The notes under the pieces are model-generated. The model did no database searches and was not told the origin of the DNA. It worked only from the letters and a program-made list of their open reading frames with translations. Shown piece after piece: positions 3 to 64,000 of a stretch of 64,000 nucleotides of DNA. This stretch comes from Octopus bimaculoides (lineage: Eukaryota), in contig NC_068982.1 of assembly GCF_001194135.2 (NCBI RefSeq), positions 49,761,148 through 49,825,147 of the forward strand, written 5' to 3'. Numbering within the stretch: the stretch's first letter is position 1; each line of letters starts with the position of its first letter. The translations under genes and the position numbers were made by a program.

Positions 3-300
3 CTAAAATGATTCATGATTGTTGCCATGTGATGCCCTTGTATGACTTTTAAGCCCGGCGAAGCTTTTACACATTTTATTACATACTAGACAACTGTGCT
101 GGCTGGCAGGAGAAACAGGTGCCACCATATGCACTCTCTTAACATGTCTTTTTAGACCTCCAACTGAAAGGCAAACCCTTCCACATTTTACACATGTTCT
201 GTCATGAATTTTAATAGCCACATCATTGTTTATCATGGGTCGATTTCTATGAGAATTTTGATGGCTCACCAGGCCTGCACGACTCAAACACCTCTACCCA
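3..300 (-). mobile_element. Tandem C2H2-type zinc fingers, probably the ORF2 C-terminus of an RTE-X-like non-LTR retrotransposon (decayed, 5'-truncated)
   Basis: The minus frame reads CG*RCLSRAGLVSHQNSH...CVKCGRVCLSVGGLKRHVKRVH...CLVCNKMCKSFAGLKSHTRASH, then stops at 3-5. There are no TGEKP linkers. An in-frame TAG in the first finger argues against an intact host ZNF exon. Clade assignment is inference. Confidence 0.55.
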
Positions 301-21518: not shown

Positions 21519-22322
21519 CACACACATATATACAACAGATTTATTTCAGTTTGTCTACCAAGTCCACTTGCAAGGCTTTGATTAGCCTAAGGCAATAGTA
21601 GAAGATACTTGAACCCAGAACCATGTGGTTGGGAAGCAAGCTTCTTACCATATAGCCACACCTGCACCTATATGGCAAAAACAAATAATAATCTAATAAA
21701 GAATACAGAATATTACATTGTCTTTACTTGTAGCAATGAACCAAAGTCCTCCACTCCATTCCCTTCGCCTCAGTAAAAATCAAAGCTCATAATTGTTACA
21801 GTCTGAAGATTCAAAGAAGAAACTGAGTTTATTCTCATCATTAAACGTTGCAAGAATTGAAGAAAAATCAAACAATCAAGATAATTTTAGACGTGTGTTG
21901 TTTCATAAATGAATGATCTGCAACATTTTAAAATAGAAATTTACAAATCCTGCTCCTACTTTGTGCTTTCTGCTTTTTCCATTAGCATTTTACTTTTGAT
22001 GCTAATGACCGGCAGCTTGTTATTTCTTTTGATGTAAAGCAGACACAATTAAAAATATAATCAAACTGTATAGAGTCAATTCATGAGTTATAAATACACA
22101 CACACACATGCACATCTGTATGTACATACACACAAACACATCATTATCACTTTTTAAGATTATTTTTTCCATGCTGAAGCATAGCTGTGAGGTTAAAGAG
22201 CTTGCTTCCCAACCAAGTGATCTTGGATTCAGTCCCACAGCAGGGCAGCTTAGGCAATCATCTGCTATAAACCAAGGCAGACCAAATCTTTGAGTGTGAT
22301 TTTAGTAGCCTGAAACCCATCA

Positions 22323-22544: not shown

Positions 22545-24600
22545 AAAGTTACCGATGGAATGCGAGCAGTCTGTGTGGAAGGGGAACTGAGGTGTGTGAT
22601 GAAATGAGGAAGAGGAGGGTGGATGTGTGCTGTGTGCAGGGGGTTAGGTGGAGGAGCCAGGGTGCAAGATTTGTTGGGGATCAAGGGAAGAAGGTACAAG
22701 TTGTGGTAGTCACGAAATAGCAGGGGGACTGGAGGTGTGGGAGTTTTGATGAAGGAAGAAATCTGTGAGAAGGTGGTGGAGGTCAGGAGAAAGAGTGTCA
22801 GAGTGATGACAATAGTGTTAGCATTTGAGGAAGAAGTGGTGAGGGTGATTTGTGGGTATGGTCCACAAAATGGAAGAGGGATCGCTGAGAAAGAGCGGTT
22901 CTTTGATGAAATGGCGAATAAGTGTGACTTACAAAAGGTAAATGAATTGGTTAGGGGCATGGGTGATTTTAATGGACATTTTGGGAAATGGATCCTGGGC
23001 TTTGAGAGTGTTCATGGGGAAAATGGAATTGAGGAGAGAAATCTGGAAGGAAGGATGCTGTTGGAGTTTTGTGATGAGAAAGAGTTGTGTGTGGTGAATA
23101 CATGGTTTAGGAAAACAGAGAAAAGGAAGGTGACTTTCAGTGCAGGAGGGAATGAGACAGACATTGATTTTGTGTTGGTTGGCAGGAAAAACAGGAAGTA
23201 TCTGAGAGATGGGAAGATAATACCAGGGGAGTTGCAGCACAGGTTGGTGGTTGCTGACTTGGATAAGAAGAAAGTTAAAAAGTGTGTGAGAAAGGGAATG
23301 GTTGAGAGGAGAAAGGTGTGGAAACTGAAGGAAGAAGCTACAAGAGCAATGTTTGAGAAGAGAGAGAGAGTTGGGAGTTGGTAAGCATTGATGTACCGGA
23401 TATGTGGAAGTCTTTTAAAGAAGGGGTGCTAAAGGCATGTGACAAAGTGTGTGGAAGAATGAAGGGTAGGAGAGATCGAGGAGATACTTGGTGGTGAAAG
23501 GAGGAGGTGAGGAAGAAAGAAGTGCACAAAGCTTTATGTAATAACAGGACTGAGCAAATGGAAGCCAGGTATAATAACAGAAAGAATCATGCAACATTTT
23601 GGGTGGTTGTGAGATCTATGAGGAAGGAAGTTGAGGAGAGGTTGAGTGGATGGATGAGAACCCAGATAGAGTTTTTAGGTTTATTAAATCAATGAAAAAT
23701 GATGGAAGAGATGTTGAGGGAGGAAGATACATGAAGAGTGATGGAAGGTTGAATTTTAGTGAGAAGGACAGGAGAAGAGTCTGGAAGTAGTATATGGAGG
23801 GAATTATGAATGAGGAGAATGAATGGGATCAGAGGGTGGAAGTTGGTGTGGTGAAGGGGCCAGTGGAGAGGGTTAGTCGGGAAGAAAGTTCGTTTGTGTA
23901 AGATGTGAGAAAGGAGCTGGAGGGCTGGCGAAGTCAGTGGAAACACTATGTGATGAGGTGGAGACAGTGAGAGGGTTTTGTTATTTGGGAGATAAGGTGG
24001 ATGTATGTGGTGGATATGAAGCAGCTGTGACAGCAAGAGCAAGACTTGGCTGGGTGAAGTTCAGGGAACATGGAGCATTGCCATACAGGAAAAGATTCTT
24101 ATTGAAGATGAAAGGAAAGGTTTATAGTTGTGTGAGAGCTGCAATGCTGTATAGGAGTGAGACATGGTCATTGAGAGAGAGAGACATAGCAATTTTGAGG
24201 ACTGAGAGAGCAATACTGAGAGAATTGTGTGACATGAGGCTATTTGATAAGAGGAGGACTGAGGACCTGATGAAGATGCTGGGGTTGGTGGAAACAGTGG
24301 AAAGGTTGGACAGGCAAATGGAGTACGGTGGTATGGACATGTGTTGAGGAGGGATGAGGAGCATGCTCTGAAGAGGGTGCTAGAGTTTGAGGTAAATGGA
24401 TAGCAAAAGCAAGGTAGACCACAGAAAATTTGAAGGGGACAGGTGGCGGAGGAGATTGGGAGGGTTGGCTTGAGAAGGGAGGATGCCCCAAACTGGACAA
24501 GATGGTGAGATGGTGTGAGGGCAGTTGCTATGGCACTGAGGTAGATCTGCCCACCCCTGTTAATGTGGACAAAACCTGGATTCAAAATGATGGATAATGA
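22545..24600 (+). mobile_element. RTE-clade LINE, decayed: APE endonuclease and post-RT C-terminus present, RT core deleted
   Basis: APE motifs: RVDVCCVQGVRW, VICGYGPQNG, GDFNGH, VVNTWFRK, TDIDFVLV, QHRLVVADL. At ~23887 VKGPVERVSREE joins directly to post-RT sequence (CDEVETVRGFCYLGD...ARARLGWVKFRE...KGKVYSCVRAAMLYRSETW). No YADD-type motif is present. There are many stops and frameshifts, and the element ends in aaaatgatggataatgatg. Confidence 0.93.
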
Positions 24601-25482: not shown

Positions 25483-26346
25483 TATCAGGCAGTATCAAAA
25501 AGTTTTTTGATTAGTTATGTTTAATAAAGAATAAATTATTTATCTAAGTTTTAACATTGTCTCCTTCAAAACAGTCACCTTGCACAACAATACACTAGTC
25601 TCAGGATTCCTGCCACTTTTAGAATCCAGACAGAAAGTTTTTTTCTGTAAGTGAACCAAGGATCTTCTGCAATTCACAGTGTTAAAACGGCGATCTTTGA
25701 GTTGCATTTTCATTTTGAGGAACAGATGGAAGTCCACAGGTGCTAAATTTGGTGAATCTGGATGGGTGAAGAGAGCTTGATAACAGGGTGCATTGTCGTT
25801 GTGAGGAATCCAATTCTTCATGCTCCACAGATCCAGTCACTTCCACTGAATATCCTCCTTTAAACACTTCAAAACATTGTTAATTGTCCTCTGATGATTT
25901 TCATAGACAAGCTGATGAATATTCTTGACATTCCTGGAGGTGACACTCATTGTAGATCTTCCAGATATCCTCATCGTCTTCCAAGGATGATCTTCAGCTT
26001 TTGAAGAGCCTGTACCACTCTAAACATTGTGTACGATCCGTTACCTCATCACCATAAGCTTGCTGAAACATGCTCAATGTCTCTGTAGCAGACTTCCCAG
26101 GTTTAATGCAAAATTTCATATCGGCTCTTTGTTCCAACTTCCTGTCCATGACAAAAATCGCAGACCACAGCATACATGTGATCACAAAAGCACAAATTTC
26201 ATAACTTGTGAAGTAAACATAGTAATTTCACTTGGCACATTGCCTTATGAAGATCACTGCAAGCTCTCATTGTGCACGAAACCAAGTGCTGCCATCTGTT
26301 GGTGTGCAACAGAAATAATCTGGGAATTTTTCGATATCATCTCGTA
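25483..26346 (-). mobile_element. Internally deleted mariner element
   Basis: N-terminal HTH MDRKLEQRADMKFCIKPGKSATETLSMFQQAYGDE...QCLEWYRLFKS and C-terminal HNDNAPCY...HPDSPNLAPVDFHLFLKMKMQLKDRRF. The diverged TA-flanked ends are TACGAGATGATATCGAAAAATTCC (minus, from 26346) and TATCAGGCAGTATCAAAAAGTT (25483). Confidence 0.85.
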
Positions 26347-33867: not shown

Positions 33868-34033
33868 CCCTCTATATGTATCTTCAGGATTTTTGTTATA
33901 ATTCCAAACTCGAATCCCAGATATTGTAACTGGTTGCGGAAATTCAAAAGAAACTATATGGGGCTTTTCAGGTGTAAATGGTATAAGCCACATATTTTCA
34001 TCAGAGTTCGTTACATTGACACCGTTTATTAAT
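33868..34033 (-). CDS. KATNIP: KATNIP (KIAA0556) internal coding exon, DUF4457-type repeat
   Basis: Acceptor tctactttcag|A at 34033, donor GGG|gtaagt at 33868; 166 nt. Peptide (K)LINGVNVTNSDENMWLIPFTPEKPHIVSFEFPQPVTISGIRVWNYNKNPEDTYRG resembles vertebrate KATNIP as I recall it (KLIDGTNIT.EDEHMWLIPFSPG...GLRFWNYNKSPEDTYRG). Phase matches the upstream exon (AA+A = Lys). Confidence 0.93.
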
Positions 34034-38419: not shown

Positions 38420-39470
38420 TATCAGGTCATTAAGAAAGAAATGTCTGATTTTGAACTGAAAGTTTATTTTACTTTATCTCAACAAAATGTAGTGCACCTA
38501 AATTATCAACACGATGTTACCATTTTATCGATAGTTTATTTATGCCAGCAGTGTAGAACTTTGGAGAGCAAGAGTTGATGAAATCACAAAAGGCTATTTT
38601 GGCATCTTTTCAGATTTGAAATTTTTTCCTTGTGAAAAGTTGTCTAGTGCCTGGAAAACATGATAGTCAGTTGGTGCAAGGTCTGGTGAACATGGTGGAT
38701 GACAGAGTACTCACAAGTTCAGTTCCTGCAACTTGAGTAGCATTCTTTATGCAACATGTGGTCAAGCATTGTCTTGCAAGAGAATTGGCTTGTCTCTTTT
38801 GACCAATCTCAGTTGTTTAATTGCAAGTTCACTTATCATTTCAACCAGTTGGTTGATGTATACATCCTCTGTAATAGACTTACCAGGTCTTATGAAGCTG
38901 TAGTGGATGACACCAGTGCTGATCACCAAACAGACACCATTAACTTTTTTAGGTGAATATTCTTTTTGGATTGTGTTTTAGCACTTCTTCTCTATCCAAC
39001 CACCATGCAGAATGCTTCCTATTGTTGAAGAGAATCCATTTTTCATCACATGTAACAATAAAATGCAAAACTGGCTTGCATTCATGCCGTGACAGCAAAG
39101 AACAGCACGTTTCAAGATGATGTGTCATTTGATGCTTCTTCAGTTCATATGGTATCCACTTGTCTAGCTTCTTTACCTTGTCAGTTTGTTTCAGATGGTC
39201 CATTACAGTTGGAATCAAAACATCAAACTTTGCTGCTAACTCACTCATAATCTGAGATGTATCCGCTTCCACTACAGTTAACTCATCACTATCCACCTTG
39301 GTCTCAGGTCAACCCCAAGGCTGATATTCAAGAGTAAAGTCACCAGACTGGAACTTCTCAAACGATCAATGTACAGTGTGCCCATTTGCCACATCTTCAC
39401 CAAACACCTCATTGATGTTTGGAGCTGTCTGGGATGCATTGGTTTCATGACTGAATTCATATTTTCCTCT
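38420..39470 (-). mobile_element. Decayed mariner (Mos1-like) element, left end missing
   Basis: YEFSHETNASQTAPNINEVFGEDVAN...FEKFQSGDF; KWIPYEL (WVPHEL motif); IVTCDEKW; PPCSPDLAPTDYHVF. The terminus TATCAGGTCATTAAGAAAGAAATGTC starts at 38420. Confidence 0.9.
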
Positions 39471-39474
39471 GGGA

Positions 39475-40135
39475 TCTGTACAGAGCCATCCTTTGATGTT
39501 GACTGTTTTTTGTTTGGCCTATGTATTGCTCTCGACACCCAGAGCAGATTAACACATATATCAGGTTCTCTGAAGCACATGTGAAGTTGCTTTCCACTGT
39601 GAAACATTGACCCTGTTTGAAAGAGAACTCTGATCCCTCAATTAGATTGATGCATATACCACAGTTAGGTCTTCTGCATTTTTTTACTGACGGCTTCAGT
39701 GTTGTTGTTGAGCATATTCGGGCTTGTATTAGGGGACTTTTCATCGATTTGGGCTGTCTTCTGCCTTTTATGATGGTGTGCGTTTGGAGGGTTAAATTCA
39801 TTGTGTGGTCCATTTCTAGTAGGGGAATGTTTTGGAGGATGGTGTCGAAGGCTTCATTGTTAACAAGGTTGTGTGTGGAGATGTATAGTAGGGCTTTTGG
39901 TTGTAAATCCTTCTTTAATTTGGGATGTCTGAGTTTGTGGATGTTGAGATGTAGGCATGTTGAAAGCATATGTCAATTAGTGATGGTGGGTAGTTTCTGG
40001 TGATGAGTGTAACCTTTAGTTCATGTAGTTGTGTGTCCCTGGTGCTTGTATTAGAAACTTTTTGCTAGGTTGAAAGGGATATTCATTCTAGTGTGTCTGC
40101 AGTGGCATGAGTTGAACTGTAGATATTGCTTGGAG
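39475..40135 (-). mobile_element. Penelope-like element fragment: post-RT helical region plus N-half of GIY-YIG endonuclease
   Basis: SKQYLQFNSCHCRHTRMNIPFNLAKSF, then KKCRRPNCGICINL...FTCASENLIYVLICSGCREQYIGQTKNSQHQRM (CxxC plus IY..YIG, GIY-YIG pattern). Confidence 0.88.
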
Positions 40136-45641: not shown

Positions 45642-46078
45642 ATGTAGAGGATCCCCTCACTGGTGTGTGACACATGCAAGCCATTTATAGTTAGCAAAAA
45701 AAAAAAATGCTTCATTTAGATTCAGCCCAGCTGAACAGCCGGCGTTATCCTCTCCACTGGTTTTTACATAAACTATAATGAGATCTTGATAAGTTGACAC
45801 CAGTGTAACATTTATTTTCAGATCAGAATTTAGAATAAACTTTCAAGAAGAGTGTTTATTGATTTTTGTCAAATATTTCCCAATAACTTGACTGCAGAAC
45901 TTATTTTCTAGCATTTCCATCACATTATATCCTCAGAGCTTTCTGGAACAGCAGGAGTTTCGCAGCATGAGATCTATACATGGTAAGAAACTGGAATTCT
46001 TTTTTTTTTTTAATTTAAAAATATGGTTAAAATTTTAATGAATTTTTGAAGTTGTATTTGGTTAACAGAATTACTTAC

Positions 46079-46256
46079 TTGTCCAATGTTCTTTCATCTT
46101 GTTCATGGCCAGGTAGACTATGCAAATCTGATGGTTCTGCACTAAGCATATTCATGTTAACTGGTAATGTCTCTTTGTCTGTACTAAATATCTCTAGTCC
46201 TGTCAAGCCTAAATAATGAAGGTCACCCCAGGTTTCGGTGAAATTTAGTTTTAAAC
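46079..46256 (-). CDS. KATNIP: KATNIP (KIAA0556) internal coding exon, DUF4457-type repeat
   Basis: Acceptor ttttcatttgtttcag|G at 46256, donor AA|gtaagt at 46079; 178 nt (2+58x3+2). Peptide (G)LKLNFTETWGDLHYLGLTGLEIFSTDKETLPVNMNMLSAEPSDLHSLPGHEQDERTLD(K) resembles vertebrate KATNIP LQLNFTASWGDLHYLGLTGLEV...SPRDLNELP...DSRTLDK, recalled from memory. Confidence 0.93.
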
Positions 46257-46308: not shown

Positions 46309-46342
46309 TAATAATAATGATGATGATAATGATAATAATAAT

Positions 46343-46790
46343 AAGGATAATCGTGAAGTATATTTGCCACTTAAATGTGGCTAACCCTTAAGGGTGGAGG
46401 CTACTGTAGCTTGTAGCCCCAGGAGGACACCTCCTCCAACTGGCTATTGACACACTTTCTGNNNNNNNNNNTAACCCTTAAGGGTGGAGGCTACTGTAGC
46501 TTGTAGCCCCAGGAGGACACCTCCTCCAACTGGCTATTGACACACTTTCTGTGCCCTATCAGTATTTGCAAAGGGAAGCCATCTTTGCCATGTTCAACCT
46601 GACATGATACACATGGACCTGAGTTTCTGGGTATTGACCCATCATCAGCGTGTGACAATCACCGGTTGTCGATGTGAAGTGGTTCCCAATGCAAATATAT
46701 ATATCCTGCTTTGTCCAGTGATGAAAAATCACTGATCTCGAAAAAGTGTAACCAAGTAATAATAAATCTCTGAACGATAATAAGGATAAT
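46343..46790 (-). mobile_element. ~450-bp non-coding element inserted in an (AAT)n tract, carrying a hammerhead motif (retrozyme-like or non-autonomous Penelope-like)
   Basis: A more GC-rich block flanked on both sides by ataataaggataat (possible TSD) within AAT-rich sequence. It has no ORF and contains several small hairpins and the hammerhead below. Confidence 0.6.
46604..46662 (-). ncRNA. Type I hammerhead ribozyme (predicted), sense to KATNIP pre-mRNA
   Basis: Minus strand: GTGAT-tgt-CACACG / CTGATGA (46648-42) / TGGGT-caat-ACCCA / GAAA (46627-24) / C-tcag-G / TC, cleavage after 46616 / CATGTG-t-ATCAT. All conserved core nucleotides are present. Stem I has one A:C mismatch and a distal internal loop. 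Confidence 0.82.
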
Positions 46791-46846
46791 AAAATAATAA
46801 GGATAATAAAAATCAGAATTTCAAAAGTTCAACAATGCGAACATCA

Positions 46847-50049: not shown

Positions 50050-51010
50050 TTTAAAATTTCTGACACAAGACCAGCAATTTCAGGGAAGGGGATAAGTCAG
50101 TTACATCGACCCCCCAGTACTCAACTAGTACTTATTTCATCGACCTCAAAACATGAAAGGCAAAGCTGATGCCAGCAGCGGAATTTGAAATCAGAACATA
50201 AAAATTAACAAAGTGCTACTAAGCATTTTGCCCGGCATCTAGTTGATTCTTTCATTTCACCACCTTAAGAAATAATAATAATAATAATAATAATATGGGA
50301 ACTGCCCATATCCTACGTAAAATACTGTCTATGTGATCTCAAATTTTAAAACAAACACATAATTTTCTTATGGTTTCTTAAACATTCTCTAGAACAACAC
50401 TATGTACAAATCCAAATATATGGTACCCTAGGCATAACACCTACATGAACTTCTAACTTGTCTCTTGAGGTCTCTGGGTGAGACTTGGATCCAACTTGTA
50501 CAAATGCAAAACAAAAGTCAAACATAAAATAACAATAATAACAATAACAATAATAATAATAATCCTTTCAACTATAGGCACAAGGCCTGCAATTTGTAGG
50601 AGGGGGATAGTCGATTACATCAACCCCAGTACTCAACTGGTACTTATTTCATCGACCCTGAAAGGATGAAATGCAAAGTTGACATCAGAGGAATTTGAAC
50701 ACAGAAAGTAAAGATGGATGAAATGCCACTAAGCATTTTGCCTGATGTGCTAATGATTCTGACAGCTTGTTACCTTAACGATAACCCTTTCTACTATAGG
50801 CACAAGGTCTGAATTTTTGTGGGGAGGGGGACAATCGATCATATTGGCTCTAGAATTTGACTGGTACTTAATTTATCAACCCTGAAATGATGAAAGGCAA
50901 AATCAACCTTGGCAGAATCTGAACTCAGAACGTAGTGAAAGACGAAATACTGCTAAGCATTTCGCCTGGCATTCTAATGATTCTGCTGGCTCACCGCCTT
51001 AATAATAATA

Positions 51011-52504: not shown

Positions 52505-53115
52505 TGATCCAAGTGCTTCTCAAGCATGATATGCCGTGCTTGAGAAGACTCATCAAGCCAAGCGAAACCATGATCGTAGCTGACGCCAGTGACATGTAAC
52601 AGGCACCCATGCTGGTGGCACATAGAAAGCACCTTTCGAACATTAGGCATCATGCAGGTGATAAGTGATTGAGAACTTTGGCGAGAAGCCATGTCTGGAA
52701 AGACTCATCAAGCCAAGGGAAATCATAGTTATGGCTGATGTCAGTGTCACATAACAGTCACCTGTATTGGTGGCACATAAAAAGCACCTTTCGAACATTG
52801 GGCCTAATGGAGGTGATAAGTGACTGAGACCTTTGGCAATATGCCATGCTTGAGAATGCTTATCAAGCCAAGGGAAATCATAGTTGCAGCCAACGCCAGT
52901 GTCATGTAACTAGCACCAATGTTAGTGGGACATAAAAAGCACCCATTACACTCTTGGAGTGATTGGTATTAGGAAGAGCATCCAGCCATAGAAACCATGC
53001 CAAATTAGACTGGAACCTGGTGCAGCTCCCCAGCTAACAACTTTCAGTCAAACCGTCTAACCCATGCTCGCATGGAAAGCAGGAGCTAAATGATGACAGC
53101 GATGGTGATGATGAT
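52505..53115 (+). mobile_element. RTE-LINE 3' end with a triplicated ~160-bp ORF2-end/3' UTR unit
   Basis: atcaagccaag at ~52552, ~52709 and ~52862; aaagcacc after each unit; ctttcgaacatt(a/g)ggc twice; then the standard tail and (gat)n. Confidence 0.75.
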
Positions 53116-54801
53116 GATGATATAATGAAATCAGAGAATTAAAACAAAACCACTCACACATACTTAAGCGTAGAGAAAATGGTAAGATATAGTGTACGCA
53201 AATGAAGGAGGAAATTAAAAAAGTGTGCTGCTGGAGAATCAGAGTTATATTAAAAGCTAAACTCATTGCAAGAAATAAGATAATAGAACACTAGAAATAA
53301 AACAATGTATACATATACAAGGTATATCAGTTAAAAATTACAGCTTTTAAAGCTATACTTTAAATGCAACTTTAAAATGAGTAACTTAAAGAACTTGGAC
53401 AAAAGACAAAATAGGAAACTACTACAGCTTTCGGAAGCTACCACCTTAAAAACCAATAGAGACAGGAAGACAAGAGTACACATGGTGGTATATCAGAAGA
53501 TCACATGAAATTGGTGATGATGATGATGGCAATAGTTACAGAAGTGCTGAAAATAGTTACAGACAGTAAGGAGCTGTATGCTTCTGGTGACAGAATTCCC
53601 AGACTTGTTTTGATTCATTACTAGGGTCATTTTCTTTACTGGTATTGTTAATACATTTGGAAAAGGTAGAAGTATTCCAATTTGAATTTTCCCTCCCCTG
53701 AAATTCTCAGGCTTTATGCCAACATAACTATTATTAAAACAACATTATTTTGGCAAGTAATCCACAAACATCTTTAATATTTCTCAATATATATTTATGC
53801 ACTATAATAGCGAGAACAATATTTATGACTAAGGCCAGCCAGCAGGACATTTTGTTCTATTGTTGTTACTCATGTTATTTCATATATTATGTACTGGAAC
53901 AATCTACAAGCTGGTTAACAGTTTTAACTAATGTATTGTAAGTTGAGGTTTCCTTTGTGTATTTGGTTCCATAGATTTGCACATGATGTATGCTTGTTTG
54001 AAGCAAAACTGGTTAAATTTAGCTCTCAAACAAATAACATTAAAATATATAAATAAATTGAAAATATATGATAAGAAATGCTAAGTCATAATGTGAAAAT
54101 TCAGCATTTTATATTAATAAATAGATTAATGTTTAGCAGCAGAAATCTGTATGATTCACATGTGGTCGCCTTACCCTTTCTCTTTTAACCTCTCTTACTT
54201 TCACAATACATATGTACTCACAAAAGCATGATTACGGAAATAATTTTTATAAGTTTATTTGGCATGGTTTTACTACTACACATGCTTAAGATTGATCAAT
54301 GTTGTGTATTTTAAGTCTGATAGATAGAAACTGTGTGGAAATCTGTATTTCTATCAATTTATCTACCTATCTATCTATAGATAAATACACTGATATATAT
54401 ACATACAAACATACATATATATTTTAAGTTTCTCTCTCCTTCATTAGGGTGTTATTTATATACATATCTGAGGAGGTGCCTCTCCAGTGTCTAAAACTGC
54501 AAATATTACGTGATTTTTCTTAATTTTCACGTAAACTGGCATTGCAAATGGAAATGGCATGGAAACATTTGTAACTTATAATTAAAGATGTGTTAATGAA
54601 TTGTCTTTGTCTTCTTTTGACTGTGTATGTATATGCGTGTGTGTGTGTGTGTGTCTGTGTCTGTGTGTATGTATGTGTGTGTGTGCATATATGTATATGT
54701 GTGAGTGTGTGTGTGTATATATANNNNNNNNNNNNNNNNNNNNNNNNNNNNNNNNNNNNNNNNNNNNNNNNNNNNNNNNNNNNNNNNNNNNNNNNNNNNN
54801 N

Positions 54802-54858
<57 letters not shown>

Positions 54859-54859
54859 T

Positions 54860-55010
54860 TCAGATGAATATTCCTCGCACTTTCCCTTACTTTGTTGCCT
54901 CTATTGAACTCATAAAGCAAAATATGGCAAATATGCTCCTTTGTCACTTCAATTATAGTTTTGAAAAACTAACTGTTAAAATCGAACTGCACTCTTCAAA
55001 ACTTGCACTA
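54860..55010 (-). mobile_element. Mariner N-terminal fragment
   Basis: TKEHICHILLYEFNRGNKVRESARNIH (HTH start of mariner transposases), truncated by (GA)n/(TA)n. Confidence 0.65.
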
Positions 55011-63481: not shown

Positions 63482-64000
63482 CCAACACACTTGAAACCTC
63501 CCCACTTGGTACTGTGGCTCAAATTTCCTATTTAACTCTTTTGGTATCATATTTCTATTGAGATGCTCTGTAACTTAGTTATAATTAAGCTAATGATAGG
63601 TACATAAATTGTGTCTAAGATTTAGAGGAAGATTTTAATTCAGAACTTTTGAAAACACTACAGAGTCAGAGGTGGTTTCAGCCTGGTTGGTATCAAAAGG
63701 GTTAAATTCATCTAGGCTTAAACCTTCCGTCAAAATTTATGCTAATTTATGTTTCAAACACCATCATACTAACGACAAATTATTTTACTAAATTCTTTAT
63801 TATTTTCAAAATTGATTGAAATAAAGGTGGTGTGTTTGATAGAAAGATGAAAAATGAAAGAAGTCAATTGTATATATATATGTATATAGTATGAGTGTGA
63901 GTGTATTTACATGAGTGTGTGCTACCACAACTTGAGATCATGTGACAGTTGTAAACAAGTGTCACCATCATACAAATGATGCAGTTCATCTCCAGTCTCT

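What the first reader, a model, noticed from the sequence alone, without database searches (positions are those of the whole stretch)
46604..46662. Complete hammerhead ribozyme in a KATNIP intron, sense strand, 359 nt upstream of a splice acceptor
Seen: every conserved hammerhead core element is in the right order on the minus strand (CUGAUGA, a perfect 5-bp stem II with CAAU loop, GAAA, a short stem III, GUC, and a stem I with a distal internal loop). This is the strand carrying the KATNIP exons, and the predicted cut (46616/46615) lies 359 nt before the acceptor at 46256. Established: type I hammerheads occur in metazoan Penelope-like elements and retrozymes, and intronic hammerheads are known in vertebrate genes. 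Inference: the KATNIP pre-mRNA could self-cleave co-transcriptionally here, affecting splicing of this exon or releasing a defined intronic RNA. Caveats: stem II closes with U-A rather than G-C, and stem III is very short with a non-palindromic loop, so activity may be low.
Basis: partly seen in the sequence, partly recalled or inferred. Interest (0 to 1): 0.85.

Follow-up and report, generated by a model that had tools for sequence, protein, structure and literature searches.

The report
Solitary hammerhead ribozyme motif in KATNIP intron
A complete hammerhead self-cleaving RNA motif really does sit on the gene's own strand in a KATNIP intron, but it most likely arrived with a small mobile-element insertion and is probably a weak, harmless passenger rather than a splicing regulator.

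Summary
The motif is real. On the minus strand, 46662-46604 holds CUGAUGA, a 5-bp helix II, GAAA, a 2-bp helix III with a tetraloop, GUC, and a 6-position helix I followed by an internal loop and a distal helix. It lies on the sense strand, upstream of a well-supported KATNIP (DUF4457) exon.

A core this good is expected by chance about 0.002-0.01 times per window. Rfam's hammerhead models do not report it, even at E<=10. It lacks the usual G10.1-C11.1 pair and a palindromic loop 3. No second copy or relative was found.

- Helix I continues into a ~135-nt hairpin, matched by only 0.4% of same-geometry genomic pairs.
- The surrounding 335-nt block is unusually structured (z about -5).
- The block is flanked by a 14-nt direct repeat found nowhere else in the window.

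A covariance model built only from three retrozyme hammerheads assayed for self-cleavage in the source paper ranks it first (18.8 bits, E~0.005).

Best reading (confidence ~0.6): a solo retrozyme- or Penelope-like insertion carrying a canonical metazoan type I hammerhead, probably slow or inactive. A regulatory role in KATNIP splicing has no support. It is a new member of a known kind, of modest interest.

The parts
46604..46662 (-). Type I hammerhead motif as reported. Helix I 5' strand 46662-46649; CUGAUGA 46648-46642; helix II and loop 2 46641-46628; GAAA 46627-46624; helix III and loop 3 46624-46617; C17 46616 (cut 46616|46615); helix I 3' strand 46615-46604.
   Evidence: Read directly from the sequence. 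It is the only hit of the strict descriptor in the window. It is the top hit of CM R1, built from three retrozyme hammerheads assayed for self-cleavage: 18.8 bits, E~0.005, spanning 46656-46608.
46563..46697 (-). Long imperfect hairpin that extends helix I, about 31 further base pairs beyond the first six. The hammerhead core sits at its tip.
   Evidence: Duplex energy of the flanks beyond the first 6 bp is -32.3 kcal/mol. Only 0.38% of 5806 same-geometry segment pairs from this window reach that value. Inverted repeat I8 lies within it. The MFE fold of the block shows the same hairpin.
46352..46776 (-). Candidate inserted element. It is 425 nt as assembled and 335 nt after removing the gap and its 80-nt duplicate. 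GC is 44%. It holds the hammerhead hairpin followed by four short hairpins.
   Evidence: MFE -109.9 kcal/mol; z = -4.6 folded as linear and -5.0 as circular, against 200 dinucleotide shuffles. No second copy in the window.
46777..46790 (-). 5' copy of the flanking direct repeat ATTATCCTTATTAT, a candidate target-site duplication. A further tandem copy lies at 46794-46807.
   Evidence: The 14-mer (one mismatch allowed) occurs only three times in the window, all at this locus. Expected 0.07.
46338..46351 (-). 3' copy of the flanking direct repeat ATTATCCTTATTAT.
   Evidence: Calibration: isolated non-simple direct repeats of >=14 nt spaced 200-600 nt occur at only a few loci per 64 kb, so this evidence is modest (p roughly 0.03-0.1).
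46382..46551 (.). N10 assembly gap (46462-46471) flanked by a perfect 80-nt duplicate. It is probably an unmerged contig overlap and inflates the hammerhead-to-acceptor distance by 90 nt.
46079..46256 (-). KATNIP (DUF4457) exon immediately downstream of the motif. Acceptor tttcag|G, donor CAA|GTAAGT.
   Evidence: Pfam DUF4457 E 2.3e-18 for the exon alone. Homologous exons at 65-76% identity in other eukaryotic contigs.
33868..34033 (-). Next KATNIP exon. It joins in frame to the previous one.
   Evidence: The joined translation matches DUF4457 positions 1-112, E 3e-47.

Best explanation
This is a single copy of a small, non-coding, highly structured retroelement. It resembles the non-LTR 'retrozymes', or the hammerhead-bearing terminal repeats of Penelope-like elements from which retrozymes are thought to derive. 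It inserted into an AT-rich microsatellite-like tract of a KATNIP intron, in the sense orientation.

It carries a canonical metazoan type I hammerhead: helix I of six positions followed by loop 1, helix II of 5 bp with a tetraloop, and a minimal helix III with a tetraloop. The catalytic core is intact (CUGAUGA / GAAAC / GUC).

Shown: the motif, its strand and position, the long helix I hairpin, the structured 335-nt block, the flanking 14-nt direct repeat, and the KATNIP exon structure.

Inferred: the retroelement origin, and the following mechanism. When the KATNIP pre-mRNA is transcribed, the motif can in principle fold and cut between 46616 and 46615. Several features predict slow or negligible cleavage:
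- It is a lone copy, with no partner for a dimeric helix III and no second site that would release a unit-length RNA.
- It has U10.1-A11.1 instead of the conserved G-C.
- It has an A.C mismatch at positions 1.2-2.2.
- The core CUGA can pair with loop 3 (UCAG) in a competing fold.

The acceptor is transcribed only about 270-360 nt later. The insertion is therefore most likely a tolerated passenger with little or no effect on KATNIP expression.
For: Core and topology:
- The core and three-helix topology are present.
- It is the only strict-descriptor hit in the window, against a chance expectation of 0.002-0.01 per window.

Match to known metazoan hammerheads:
- The architecture matches the published definition of canonical metazoan type I hammerheads: helix I 6 bp, helix II 4 bp, helix III 1-2 bp with a 2-4 nt loop (PMC4209133).
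- The mussel retrozyme hammerhead has an identical helix III design. The axolotl Ax353 hammerhead also has U at position 10.1 (PMC7229834 supplement).
- CM R1, built only from those three assayed ribozymes, ranks this site first: 18.8 bits, E~0.005.

- Helix I extends to about 36 bp in total. The extension energy is -32.3 kcal/mol, in the top 0.38% of genomic background, and comparable to axolotl Ax353 at -28.4.
- The 335-nt block has z of -4.6 to -5.0. Its size and 44% GC fall in the retrozyme range of ~170-400 nt and <45-50% GC.
- A 14-nt direct repeat, unique to this locus, flanks the block.

Thermodynamics does not count against it. The energy gap between the hammerhead fold and the MFE is 7.2 kcal/mol, versus 7.4 for the mussel ribozyme.

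Background:
- A cephalopod genome paper reports 235 Rfam Hammerhead_1 loci (PMC6962438).
- Penelope-like and retrozyme elements favour microsatellite targets (PMC8557442).
Against: - Rfam 15 reports no hammerhead family at the gathering threshold, or at E<=10 even on a 91-nt slice.
- The motif lacks two hallmarks specialists use to separate real from random motifs: the G10.1-C11.1 pair and a palindromic loop 3 (PMC4209133).
- Helix I has an A.C mismatch next to the cleavage site.
- No other copy exists in the window.
- No relative appeared in 241 million metagenome records. The only two hits were bacterial coding sequences.
- A six-frame probe against 5.8 billion proteins found nothing.
- There is no tandem arrangement, which defines retrozymes.
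- There is no adjacent RT/GIY-YIG ORF. The nearest GIY-YIG-like ORF is 6.6 kb away and reaches only E=0.1.
- The source genome could not be searched, so family membership is untested.
- The flanking repeat is AT-rich and sits next to (TTA)n, so it is only modest evidence.
Confidence: 0.6

Rival explanations
1. Chance look-alike. An intronic hairpin with no ribozyme ancestry happens to carry the hammerhead core boxes and two short helices at its tip, and does nothing.
For: - Descriptor matches are expected at 0.002-0.01 per window, which means tens to hundreds per Gb-sized genome.
- Rfam is silent.
- There is no G10.1-C11.1 pair and no palindromic loop 3.
- The motif is single-copy everywhere I could look.
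- The local fold z-score for the 76-nt motif alone is only -0.34.
Against: - The chance rate has to be multiplied by the ~0.4% chance of the long helix I extension and by the modest chance of the flanking direct repeat. That gives roughly 1e-6 to 1e-5 per window.
- The helix sizes and the position of loop 1 match the canonical metazoan design without having been required by the descriptor.
- An independent CM built from assayed ribozymes ranks it first.
- The whole 335-nt block is strongly structured.
Confidence: 0.2
2. Exapted regulatory ribozyme. The hammerhead is maintained by selection in the KATNIP intron. It cuts the nascent pre-mRNA in kinetic competition with splicing of the downstream exon and so tunes KATNIP mRNA output. 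This would be analogous to the intronic CPEB3 ribozyme of mammals or the HH9/HH10 intronic hammerheads of amniotes.
For: - It is in sense orientation, only ~270-360 nt upstream of the acceptor.
- The catalytic core is intact.
- There is precedent for an intronic ribozyme competing with co-transcriptional splicing (PMC10919898, abstract seen).
Against: - No hammerhead lies upstream of the homologous exon in three related contigs. These contigs are distant (65-76% amino-acid identity), so the test is weak.
- There is no match to the Rfam HH9 or HH10 models.
- The insertion-like context suggests a passenger.
- The sequence features predict low activity.
- Retrozymes are reported to be depleted from introns, implying that genic copies are usually selected against rather than recruited (bioRxiv 10.64898/2026.07.22.740005).
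Confidence: 0.07
3. Fragment of an autonomous Penelope-like element. The block would be a solo pseudo-LTR left after loss of the RT/endonuclease body, rather than a retrozyme-type non-autonomous element.
For: - Penelope-like elements carry hammerheads in their terminal repeats and prefer microsatellite targets.
- A GIY-YIG-like ORF remnant exists in the same intron region at 39457-39969 on the minus strand.
Against: - Metazoan Penelope-like hammerheads are described as 'minimal': helix II of 7-8 bp, helix I of 4-5 bp, a poorly defined loop 1, an extra base before 10.1, and often no helix III. This motif has the canonical helix sizes instead.
- The GIY-YIG-like ORF is 6.6 kb away, is below the Pfam threshold, and no RT was found between it and the motif.
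Confidence: 0.1

Closest known systems
Non-LTR retrozymes of invertebrates with canonical type I hammerheads (for example Mytilus galloprovincialis Mg353 and Acropora millepora Amil224; Cervera & de la Pena 2020, PMC7229834)
   Same: - Type I topology with the core CUGAUGA / GAAAC / GUC.
- Helix I of six positions followed by an internal loop.
- Short helix II with a small loop.
- Helix III of A-U and C-G capped by a tetraloop, identical in design to Mg353.
- Element size about 335 nt, GC 44%, and a strongly self-paired RNA.
- Flanking direct repeat longer than 4 bp.
   Different: - A single copy, not a tandem array, so there is only one cleavage site and no unit-length or circular RNA can form.
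- U10.1-A11.1 instead of G-C.
- Non-palindromic loop 3.
- An A.C mismatch in helix I.
- No sequence similarity to the mussel or coral elements outside the core.
- A multicopy family has not been demonstrated.
Axolotl retrozyme hammerhead HHR_Amex2 (Ax353)
   Same: - U at position 10.1, which weakens the base of helix II.
- Two-pair helix III with a tetraloop.
- Long, stable extension of helix I: -28.4 kcal/mol versus -32.3 here.
- The axolotl ribozyme cleaves poorly as a monomer (22% in 1 h), which is the behaviour predicted here.
   Different: - The axolotl motif has a U.U mismatch rather than a U-A pair.
- It occurs in about 60,000 tandemly arranged copies.
- It is rescued by dimer formation between neighbouring copies, which is impossible for a lone copy.
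Minimal hammerheads in the pseudo-LTRs of Penelope-like elements (Cervera & de la Pena 2014, PMC4209133)
   Same: Association of type I hammerheads with retroelements that target microsatellites. Low intrinsic activity.
   Different: The minimal motifs have a long helix II (7-8 bp), a short helix I, an extra unpaired base before 10.1, a conserved G10.1-C11.1 pair, and little or no helix III. This motif has canonical helix sizes and no adjacent RT/GIY-YIG ORF.
Conserved intronic self-cleaving ribozymes of vertebrates (hammerheads HH9/HH10 in amniote introns; the HDV-like CPEB3 ribozyme)
   Same: Sense-strand location inside an intron of a protein-coding gene. Potential kinetic competition between self-cleavage and splicing.
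   Different: Those are defined by deep conservation at orthologous positions, and HH9/HH10 have their own Rfam models. Here no Rfam model matches, and no conservation could be shown.

Membership tests
Hammerhead ribozyme (any type) | Conserved catalytic core: C3 U4 G5 A6 N7 G8 A9 / G12 A13 A14 / A15.1-U16.1 / H17 | tested here: met
   CUGAUGA 46648-46642, GAA 46627-46625, A15.1 46624 paired with U16.1 46617, C17 46616. This fits the published CUGANGA / GAAAY / RUH boxes.
Hammerhead ribozyme (any type) | Three helices radiating from the core, with helix II directly flanked by A9 and G12 | tested here: met
   It passes the strict structural descriptor: helix II 5 bp, helix III 2 bp, helix I 5 of 6 positions paired.
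Hammerhead ribozyme (any type) | Site-specific self-cleavage 3' of position 17 | not testable with these tools
   This needs an in vitro transcription/cleavage assay or mapping of RNA ends.
Rfam Hammerhead_1 (RF00163) and the other Rfam hammerhead families | Covariance-model score at or above the family's gathering threshold | tested here: not met
   No hammerhead family was reported at the gathering threshold on the whole window, or at E<=10 on 701-nt and 91-nt slices.
Canonical metazoan type I hammerhead (Cervera & de la Pena 2014 definition) | Open helix I of ~6 bp followed by loop 1; helix II of ~4 bp with a loop; helix III of 1-2 bp capped by a 2-4 nt loop | tested here: met
   Helix I has six positions (one A.C mismatch), then an internal loop UGU/U and a 5-bp distal helix. 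Helix II has 5 bp and loop CAAU. Helix III has A-U and C-G with loop UCAG. CM R1 from three assayed members gives 18.8 bits, E~0.005.
Canonical metazoan type I hammerhead (Cervera & de la Pena 2014 definition) | Highly conserved G10.1-C11.1 pair and a palindromic loop 3 | tested here: not met
   Positions 10.1-11.1 are U-A, and loop 3 is UCAG, which is not palindromic. The axolotl HHR_Amex2 family is a natural exception at 10.1.
Non-LTR retrozyme | Short tandem repeats (dimers to multimers) of ~170-400 bp, each with a type I hammerhead | tested here: not met
   There is only one hammerhead and one copy of the block in the 64-kb window. Solo monomers are described for retrozyme families, but they do not define membership.
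Non-LTR retrozyme | Unit size ~170-400 nt, low GC, RNA with extensive self-pairing | tested here: met
   335 nt, GC 44%, MFE z of -4.6 to -5.0.
Non-LTR retrozyme | [quoted passage not shown] | not testable with these tools
   The source genome and its transcriptome are not available. Surrogate searches found nothing but do not cover this species.
Penelope-like element | RT plus GIY-YIG endonuclease ORF flanked by hammerhead-bearing pseudo-LTRs | tested here: not met
   No RT or endonuclease ORF lies next to the block. The nearest GIY-YIG-like ORF is 6.6 kb away at E=0.1.
Conserved intronic hammerheads (HH9/HH10 type) | Presence at the orthologous intron position across species | tested here: inconclusive
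   It is absent upstream of the homologous exon in L001-L003. Those contigs are only 65-76% identical in the exon, and their introns do not align.

The most novel reading that the evidence does not exclude
The motif is an active, host-retained ribozyme. It would be a sense-strand type I hammerhead with an unusual U10.1-A11.1 pair and a ~36-bp helix I, cutting the nascent KATNIP pre-mRNA about 270-360 nt before the 3' splice site. In that case it would set the yield of a ciliary/microtubule-regulator mRNA by kinetic competition with splicing. This would be an invertebrate counterpart of the CPEB3 ribozyme.
Probability: 0.05. Interest if true: 0.65.

Novelty: new member of a known kind. Interest (0 to 1): 0.3.

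Why it matters
Hammerheads embedded in animal retroelements are common and well described, so one more copy is not surprising.

The case is useful in two small ways. First, it shows that a motif with a perfect core and canonical helix sizes can be missed entirely by the Rfam models. Context, meaning helix I extension, block structure and flanking repeats, was needed to separate it from the many chance matches expected in a large genome. Second, a sense-oriented copy this close to a 3' splice site is a natural test of how much intronic self-cleavage a gene tolerates. That matters given the reported depletion of retrozymes from introns. If the motif proved active and conserved, it would be a rare invertebrate example of an intronic ribozyme acting on a host mRNA.

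Tried and rejected
1. Rfam cmscan, at the gathering threshold and at E<=10 on small slices, gave no hammerhead hit. I kept this as evidence against typicality, not as a refutation, because the core and topology can be verified by eye.

2. I first read 'the MFE is not the hammerhead fold, z = -0.34' as evidence against the motif. I rejected that reading because retrozyme hammerheads with measured self-cleavage show the same or larger energy gaps.

3. I considered that the region might be a KATNIP coding exon, because L002 and L003 carry CGCTGATGATGG in the acidic exon just upstream of the homologous exon. I rejected this. The window frame has a stop codon immediately upstream and no acceptor, and the better though still weak counterpart of that exon is at 63727-63662.

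4. I searched for relatives in several ways, all without success:
- An exact-pattern scan of metagenome contigs gave only two bacterial coding-sequence coincidences.
- A six-frame probe of 46472-46770 against 5.8 billion proteins gave nothing.
- Exact look-ups of window ORFs returned 'not on record'.
- These collections evidently do not contain this species, so the negatives are weak.

5. I looked for a second copy or a tandem partner in the window with blastn (word sizes 7-9), nhmmer, TRF, a relaxed descriptor and the CM. None was found.

6. I looked for a link to the GIY-YIG-like ORF at 39.5-40.0 kb. It is too far away and too weak.

7. I compared the block with the mussel and coral retrozyme sequences. 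There is no similarity outside the core.

8. The organism could not be identified. The AT-rich sequence, TA/CA microsatellites and mariner/SINE content suggested a mollusc or cephalopod to me, but that is an impression and was not tested.

Full report
**What is in the sequence**

On the minus strand, 46662-46604 reads GUGAUUGUCACACG-CUGAUGA-UGGGU-CAAU-ACCCA-GAAA-C-UCAG-G-U-C-CAUGUGUAUCAU. In standard hammerhead numbering:
- C3-A9 is 46648-46642.
- Helix II is U10.1-A11.1 plus GGGU/ACCC, with loop CAAU.
- G12-A14 is 46627-46625.
- Helix III is A15.1-U16.1 and C15.2-G16.2, with loop UCAG.
- C17 is 46616, so the scissile bond is 46616|46615.

Helix I is C1.1-G2.1, an A1.2.C2.2 mismatch, four Watson-Crick pairs, an internal loop (UGU on the 5' strand, U on the 3' strand), and then a 5-bp distal helix.

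**Gene context**

The exon downstream of the motif is 46256-46079 on the minus strand, with acceptor tttcag|G and donor CAA|GTAAGT. It matches Pfam DUF4457, which I know as the KATNIP/KIAA0556 domain, at E 2.3e-18. It splices in frame to 34033-33868, giving DUF4457 positions 1-112 at E 3e-47. Homologous exons at 65-76% identity occur on eukaryotic contigs in public assemblies.

The motif is therefore on the sense strand, just upstream of an internal exon. I could not robustly locate an upstream KATNIP exon inside the window. The only candidate is weak, at 63727-63662. 'Inside the transcription unit' is thus an inference from the acceptor site and the domain architecture.

The stated 359 nt to the acceptor is correct as assembled. 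However, it spans an N10 gap (46462-46471) flanked by a perfect 80-nt duplicate. That pattern looks like an unmerged contig overlap, so the true distance is probably about 269 nt.

**Is the core more than chance?**

The linear pattern CTGATGA..GAAA..GTC is expected 0.34 times per window. I wrote a structural descriptor requiring:
- CUGANGA, then helix II of at least 4 bp directly abutting GAAA;
- helix III of at least 2 bp starting with A-U;
- U-H;
- helix I of 6 positions with at most 1 mismatch.

I ran it on 73 Mb of first-order Markov sequence with the window's composition. It gave 0.01 hits per window, or about 0.002 when helix II must be at least 5 bp.

In the real window the site is the only strict hit. 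Two weak hits appear only with a much laxer descriptor. The motif is therefore unlikely in any one window. In a Gb-sized genome, though, tens to hundreds of such matches are expected by chance. That is comparable with the 235 Rfam Hammerhead_1 loci reported for a squid genome (PMC6962438). The core alone does not decide the matter.

**Evidence against a typical hammerhead**

- Rfam 15 gives no hammerhead family at the gathering threshold on the whole window. It gives none at E<=10 on a 701-nt slice or a 91-nt slice.
- The motif lacks two features that Cervera & de la Pena list as emerging in real families without being part of their search descriptor: the G10.1-C11.1 pair and a palindromic loop 3 (PMC4209133).
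- No relative was found anywhere I could search. The pattern CTGATGATGGGT-N3-6-ACCCAGAAA in 241 million metagenome records hit only two bacterial coding sequences.
- A six-frame probe of 46472-46770 against 5.8 billion proteins found nothing, and window ORFs are not on record.
- These collections do not seem to hold this species, so the negatives are weak.
- Upstream of the homologous exon in three related contigs there is no hammerhead by pattern, by my CM, or by Rfam. Those introns do not align with this one.

**Evidence that it is nevertheless a real, element-derived hammerhead**

1. Architecture. The published description of canonical metazoan type I hammerheads is helix I of 6 bp, helix II of 4 bp, and helix III of 1-2 bp capped by a 2-4 nt loop. 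This is exactly the layout here. The supplement of PMC7229834 gives retrozyme sequences that were assayed for self-cleavage. The mussel Mg353 hammerhead has the same helix III (A-U, C-G, tetraloop) and cleaves at about 0.1 per min. The axolotl Ax353 hammerhead also has U at 10.1 and cleaves weakly as a monomer (22% in 1 h).

2. Independent model. A covariance model built only from the mussel, coral and axolotl ribozymes ranks this site first in the window, at 18.8 bits and E~0.005. This E-value comes from a shortened calibration and is rough. The next hit lacks the core.

3. Thermodynamics. The hammerhead fold lies 7.2 kcal/mol above the MFE. The value for the mussel ribozyme is 7.4, so the poor local z-score is not informative.

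4. The flanks 46700-46655 and 46609-46560 form about 31 further base pairs (-32.3 kcal/mol). Only 0.38% of 5806 same-geometry segment pairs drawn from this window do as well. The axolotl retrozyme shows a similar extension of -28.4 kcal/mol.

5. Structured block. The surrounding 335-nt block (46776-46352, with the gap duplicate removed) contains this hairpin and four more short hairpins. Its MFE z-score is -4.6 as a linear molecule and -5.0 as a circular one. Its size and 44% GC fall within the retrozyme range.

6. Flanking repeat. The block is bracketed by the 14-mer ATTATCCTTATTAT (46790-46777 and 46351-46338, with a third copy at 46807-46794). This 14-mer occurs nowhere else in the window. 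Isolated repeats of that kind are found at only a few loci per 64 kb. The context is AT-rich and microsatellite-like, so I count this as modest support for a target-site duplication. Metazoan retrozymes, when they have such duplications, have ones longer than 4 bp. Penelope-like elements favour microsatellite targets.

Features 4-6 were not used to pick the site. Multiplying the chance rates gives roughly 1e-6 to 1e-5 per window, which is below one expected occurrence per genome.

**Most likely mechanism**

I conclude, with confidence about 0.6, that this is a solo copy of a small hammerhead-bearing retroelement of the retrozyme or Penelope-derived kind. It inserted in sense orientation into the KATNIP intron.

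The motif could cut the nascent pre-mRNA at 46616|46615. Several properties predict slow or negligible cleavage:
- a lone copy, so no dimeric helix III and no second site to release a unit-length or circular RNA;
- U10.1-A11.1 in place of G-C;
- the A.C mismatch next to the cleavage site;
- a competing CUGA/UCAG pairing seen in the MFE fold.

The acceptor is transcribed only a few hundred nucleotides later. From my own knowledge of the literature (not checked here), slow intronic ribozymes do not disturb splicing because the exons stay tethered to the polymerase, whereas very fast ones do. The CPEB3 ribozyme is a documented case of such competition (PMC10919898). Retrozymes are reported to be depleted from introns in Xenopus. 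That fits the view that a surviving sense-strand copy is a weak one.

**Rivals**

- Chance look-alike (0.2).
- A solo pseudo-LTR of an autonomous Penelope-like element (0.1). This is disfavoured because metazoan Penelope-like hammerheads are of the 'minimal' type with different helix sizes, and because no RT or endonuclease ORF is adjacent.
- An exapted regulator of KATNIP splicing (0.07), for which there is no positive evidence.

**Comparison with known systems and novelty**

It works like, and looks like, a canonical metazoan type I hammerhead. I do not file it as a retrozyme, because the defining tandem arrangement is not met and the multicopy family could not be tested. I do not file it as an Rfam Hammerhead_1 member, because the score threshold is not met.

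It is best described as a new, somewhat atypical member of a known kind. Interest is modest (0.3). It would rise if the motif proved active and conserved at this position.

Noticed in passing
window 46382-46551: A perfect 80-nt duplicate lies on either side of the N10 gap 46462-46471. It is most likely an unmerged contig overlap. It inflates the distance between the hammerhead and the KATNIP acceptor by 90 nt.
   Followed up: partly
window 39457-39969 (-), with 38949-39296 (-) adjacent: An ORF ends in a GIY-YIG-like motif (LIYVLICSGCREQYIGQT) preceded by a CxxCxxC cluster. Pfam GIY-YIG reaches only E=0.1. It may be a remnant of a Penelope-like or other GIY-YIG element, and appears to be interrupted by a mariner-like fragment.
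   Followed up: partly
L002 1993-2004 and L003 359-370 versus window 46650-46639: The 12-mer CGCTGATGATGG, which overlaps the hammerhead core, also occurs in the acidic KATNIP exon just upstream of the homologous exon in two related contigs. I judged this a coincidence, because the window frame has a stop codon and no acceptor there.
   Followed up: yes
window 63662-63727 (-): A weak candidate (45% identity over 22 aa, E~0.1) for the acidic KATNIP exon seen in related contigs. If real, the intron holding the hammerhead is about 17 kb long.
   Followed up: partly
window 45902-45936 (-) and 21803-21843 (+): Hammerhead-like matches that appear only with a much relaxed descriptor (3-bp helix II, AT-rich). 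About 0.1 such matches per window are expected by chance.
   Followed up: yes
window 22737-24347 (+): Fragments of a non-LTR retrotransposon ORF. The endonuclease-RT family Exo_endo_phos_2 matches at E 3.6e-4, below the Pfam cut-off.
   Followed up: no
window 54582-54947 (-) and 25540-25821 (-): Mariner/Mos1-type transposase fragments. Only the first (54582-54947) has Pfam support: HTH_48, E 1.8e-7. The second (25540-25821) had no Pfam hit in the same scan, and I label it mariner-like from the look of its sequence alone.
   Followed up: no
window 50559-50985 and 52533-52943: Long-period tandem repeats (224 nt x 1.9 copies and 155 nt x 2.6 copies) that may be SINE-like (not tested). No hammerhead motif is found in them.
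   Followed up: partly
window 3-287 (-): An ORF with C2H2-type zinc-finger matches lies at the edge of the window. It is probably an exon or a transposon-borne fragment.
   Followed up: no
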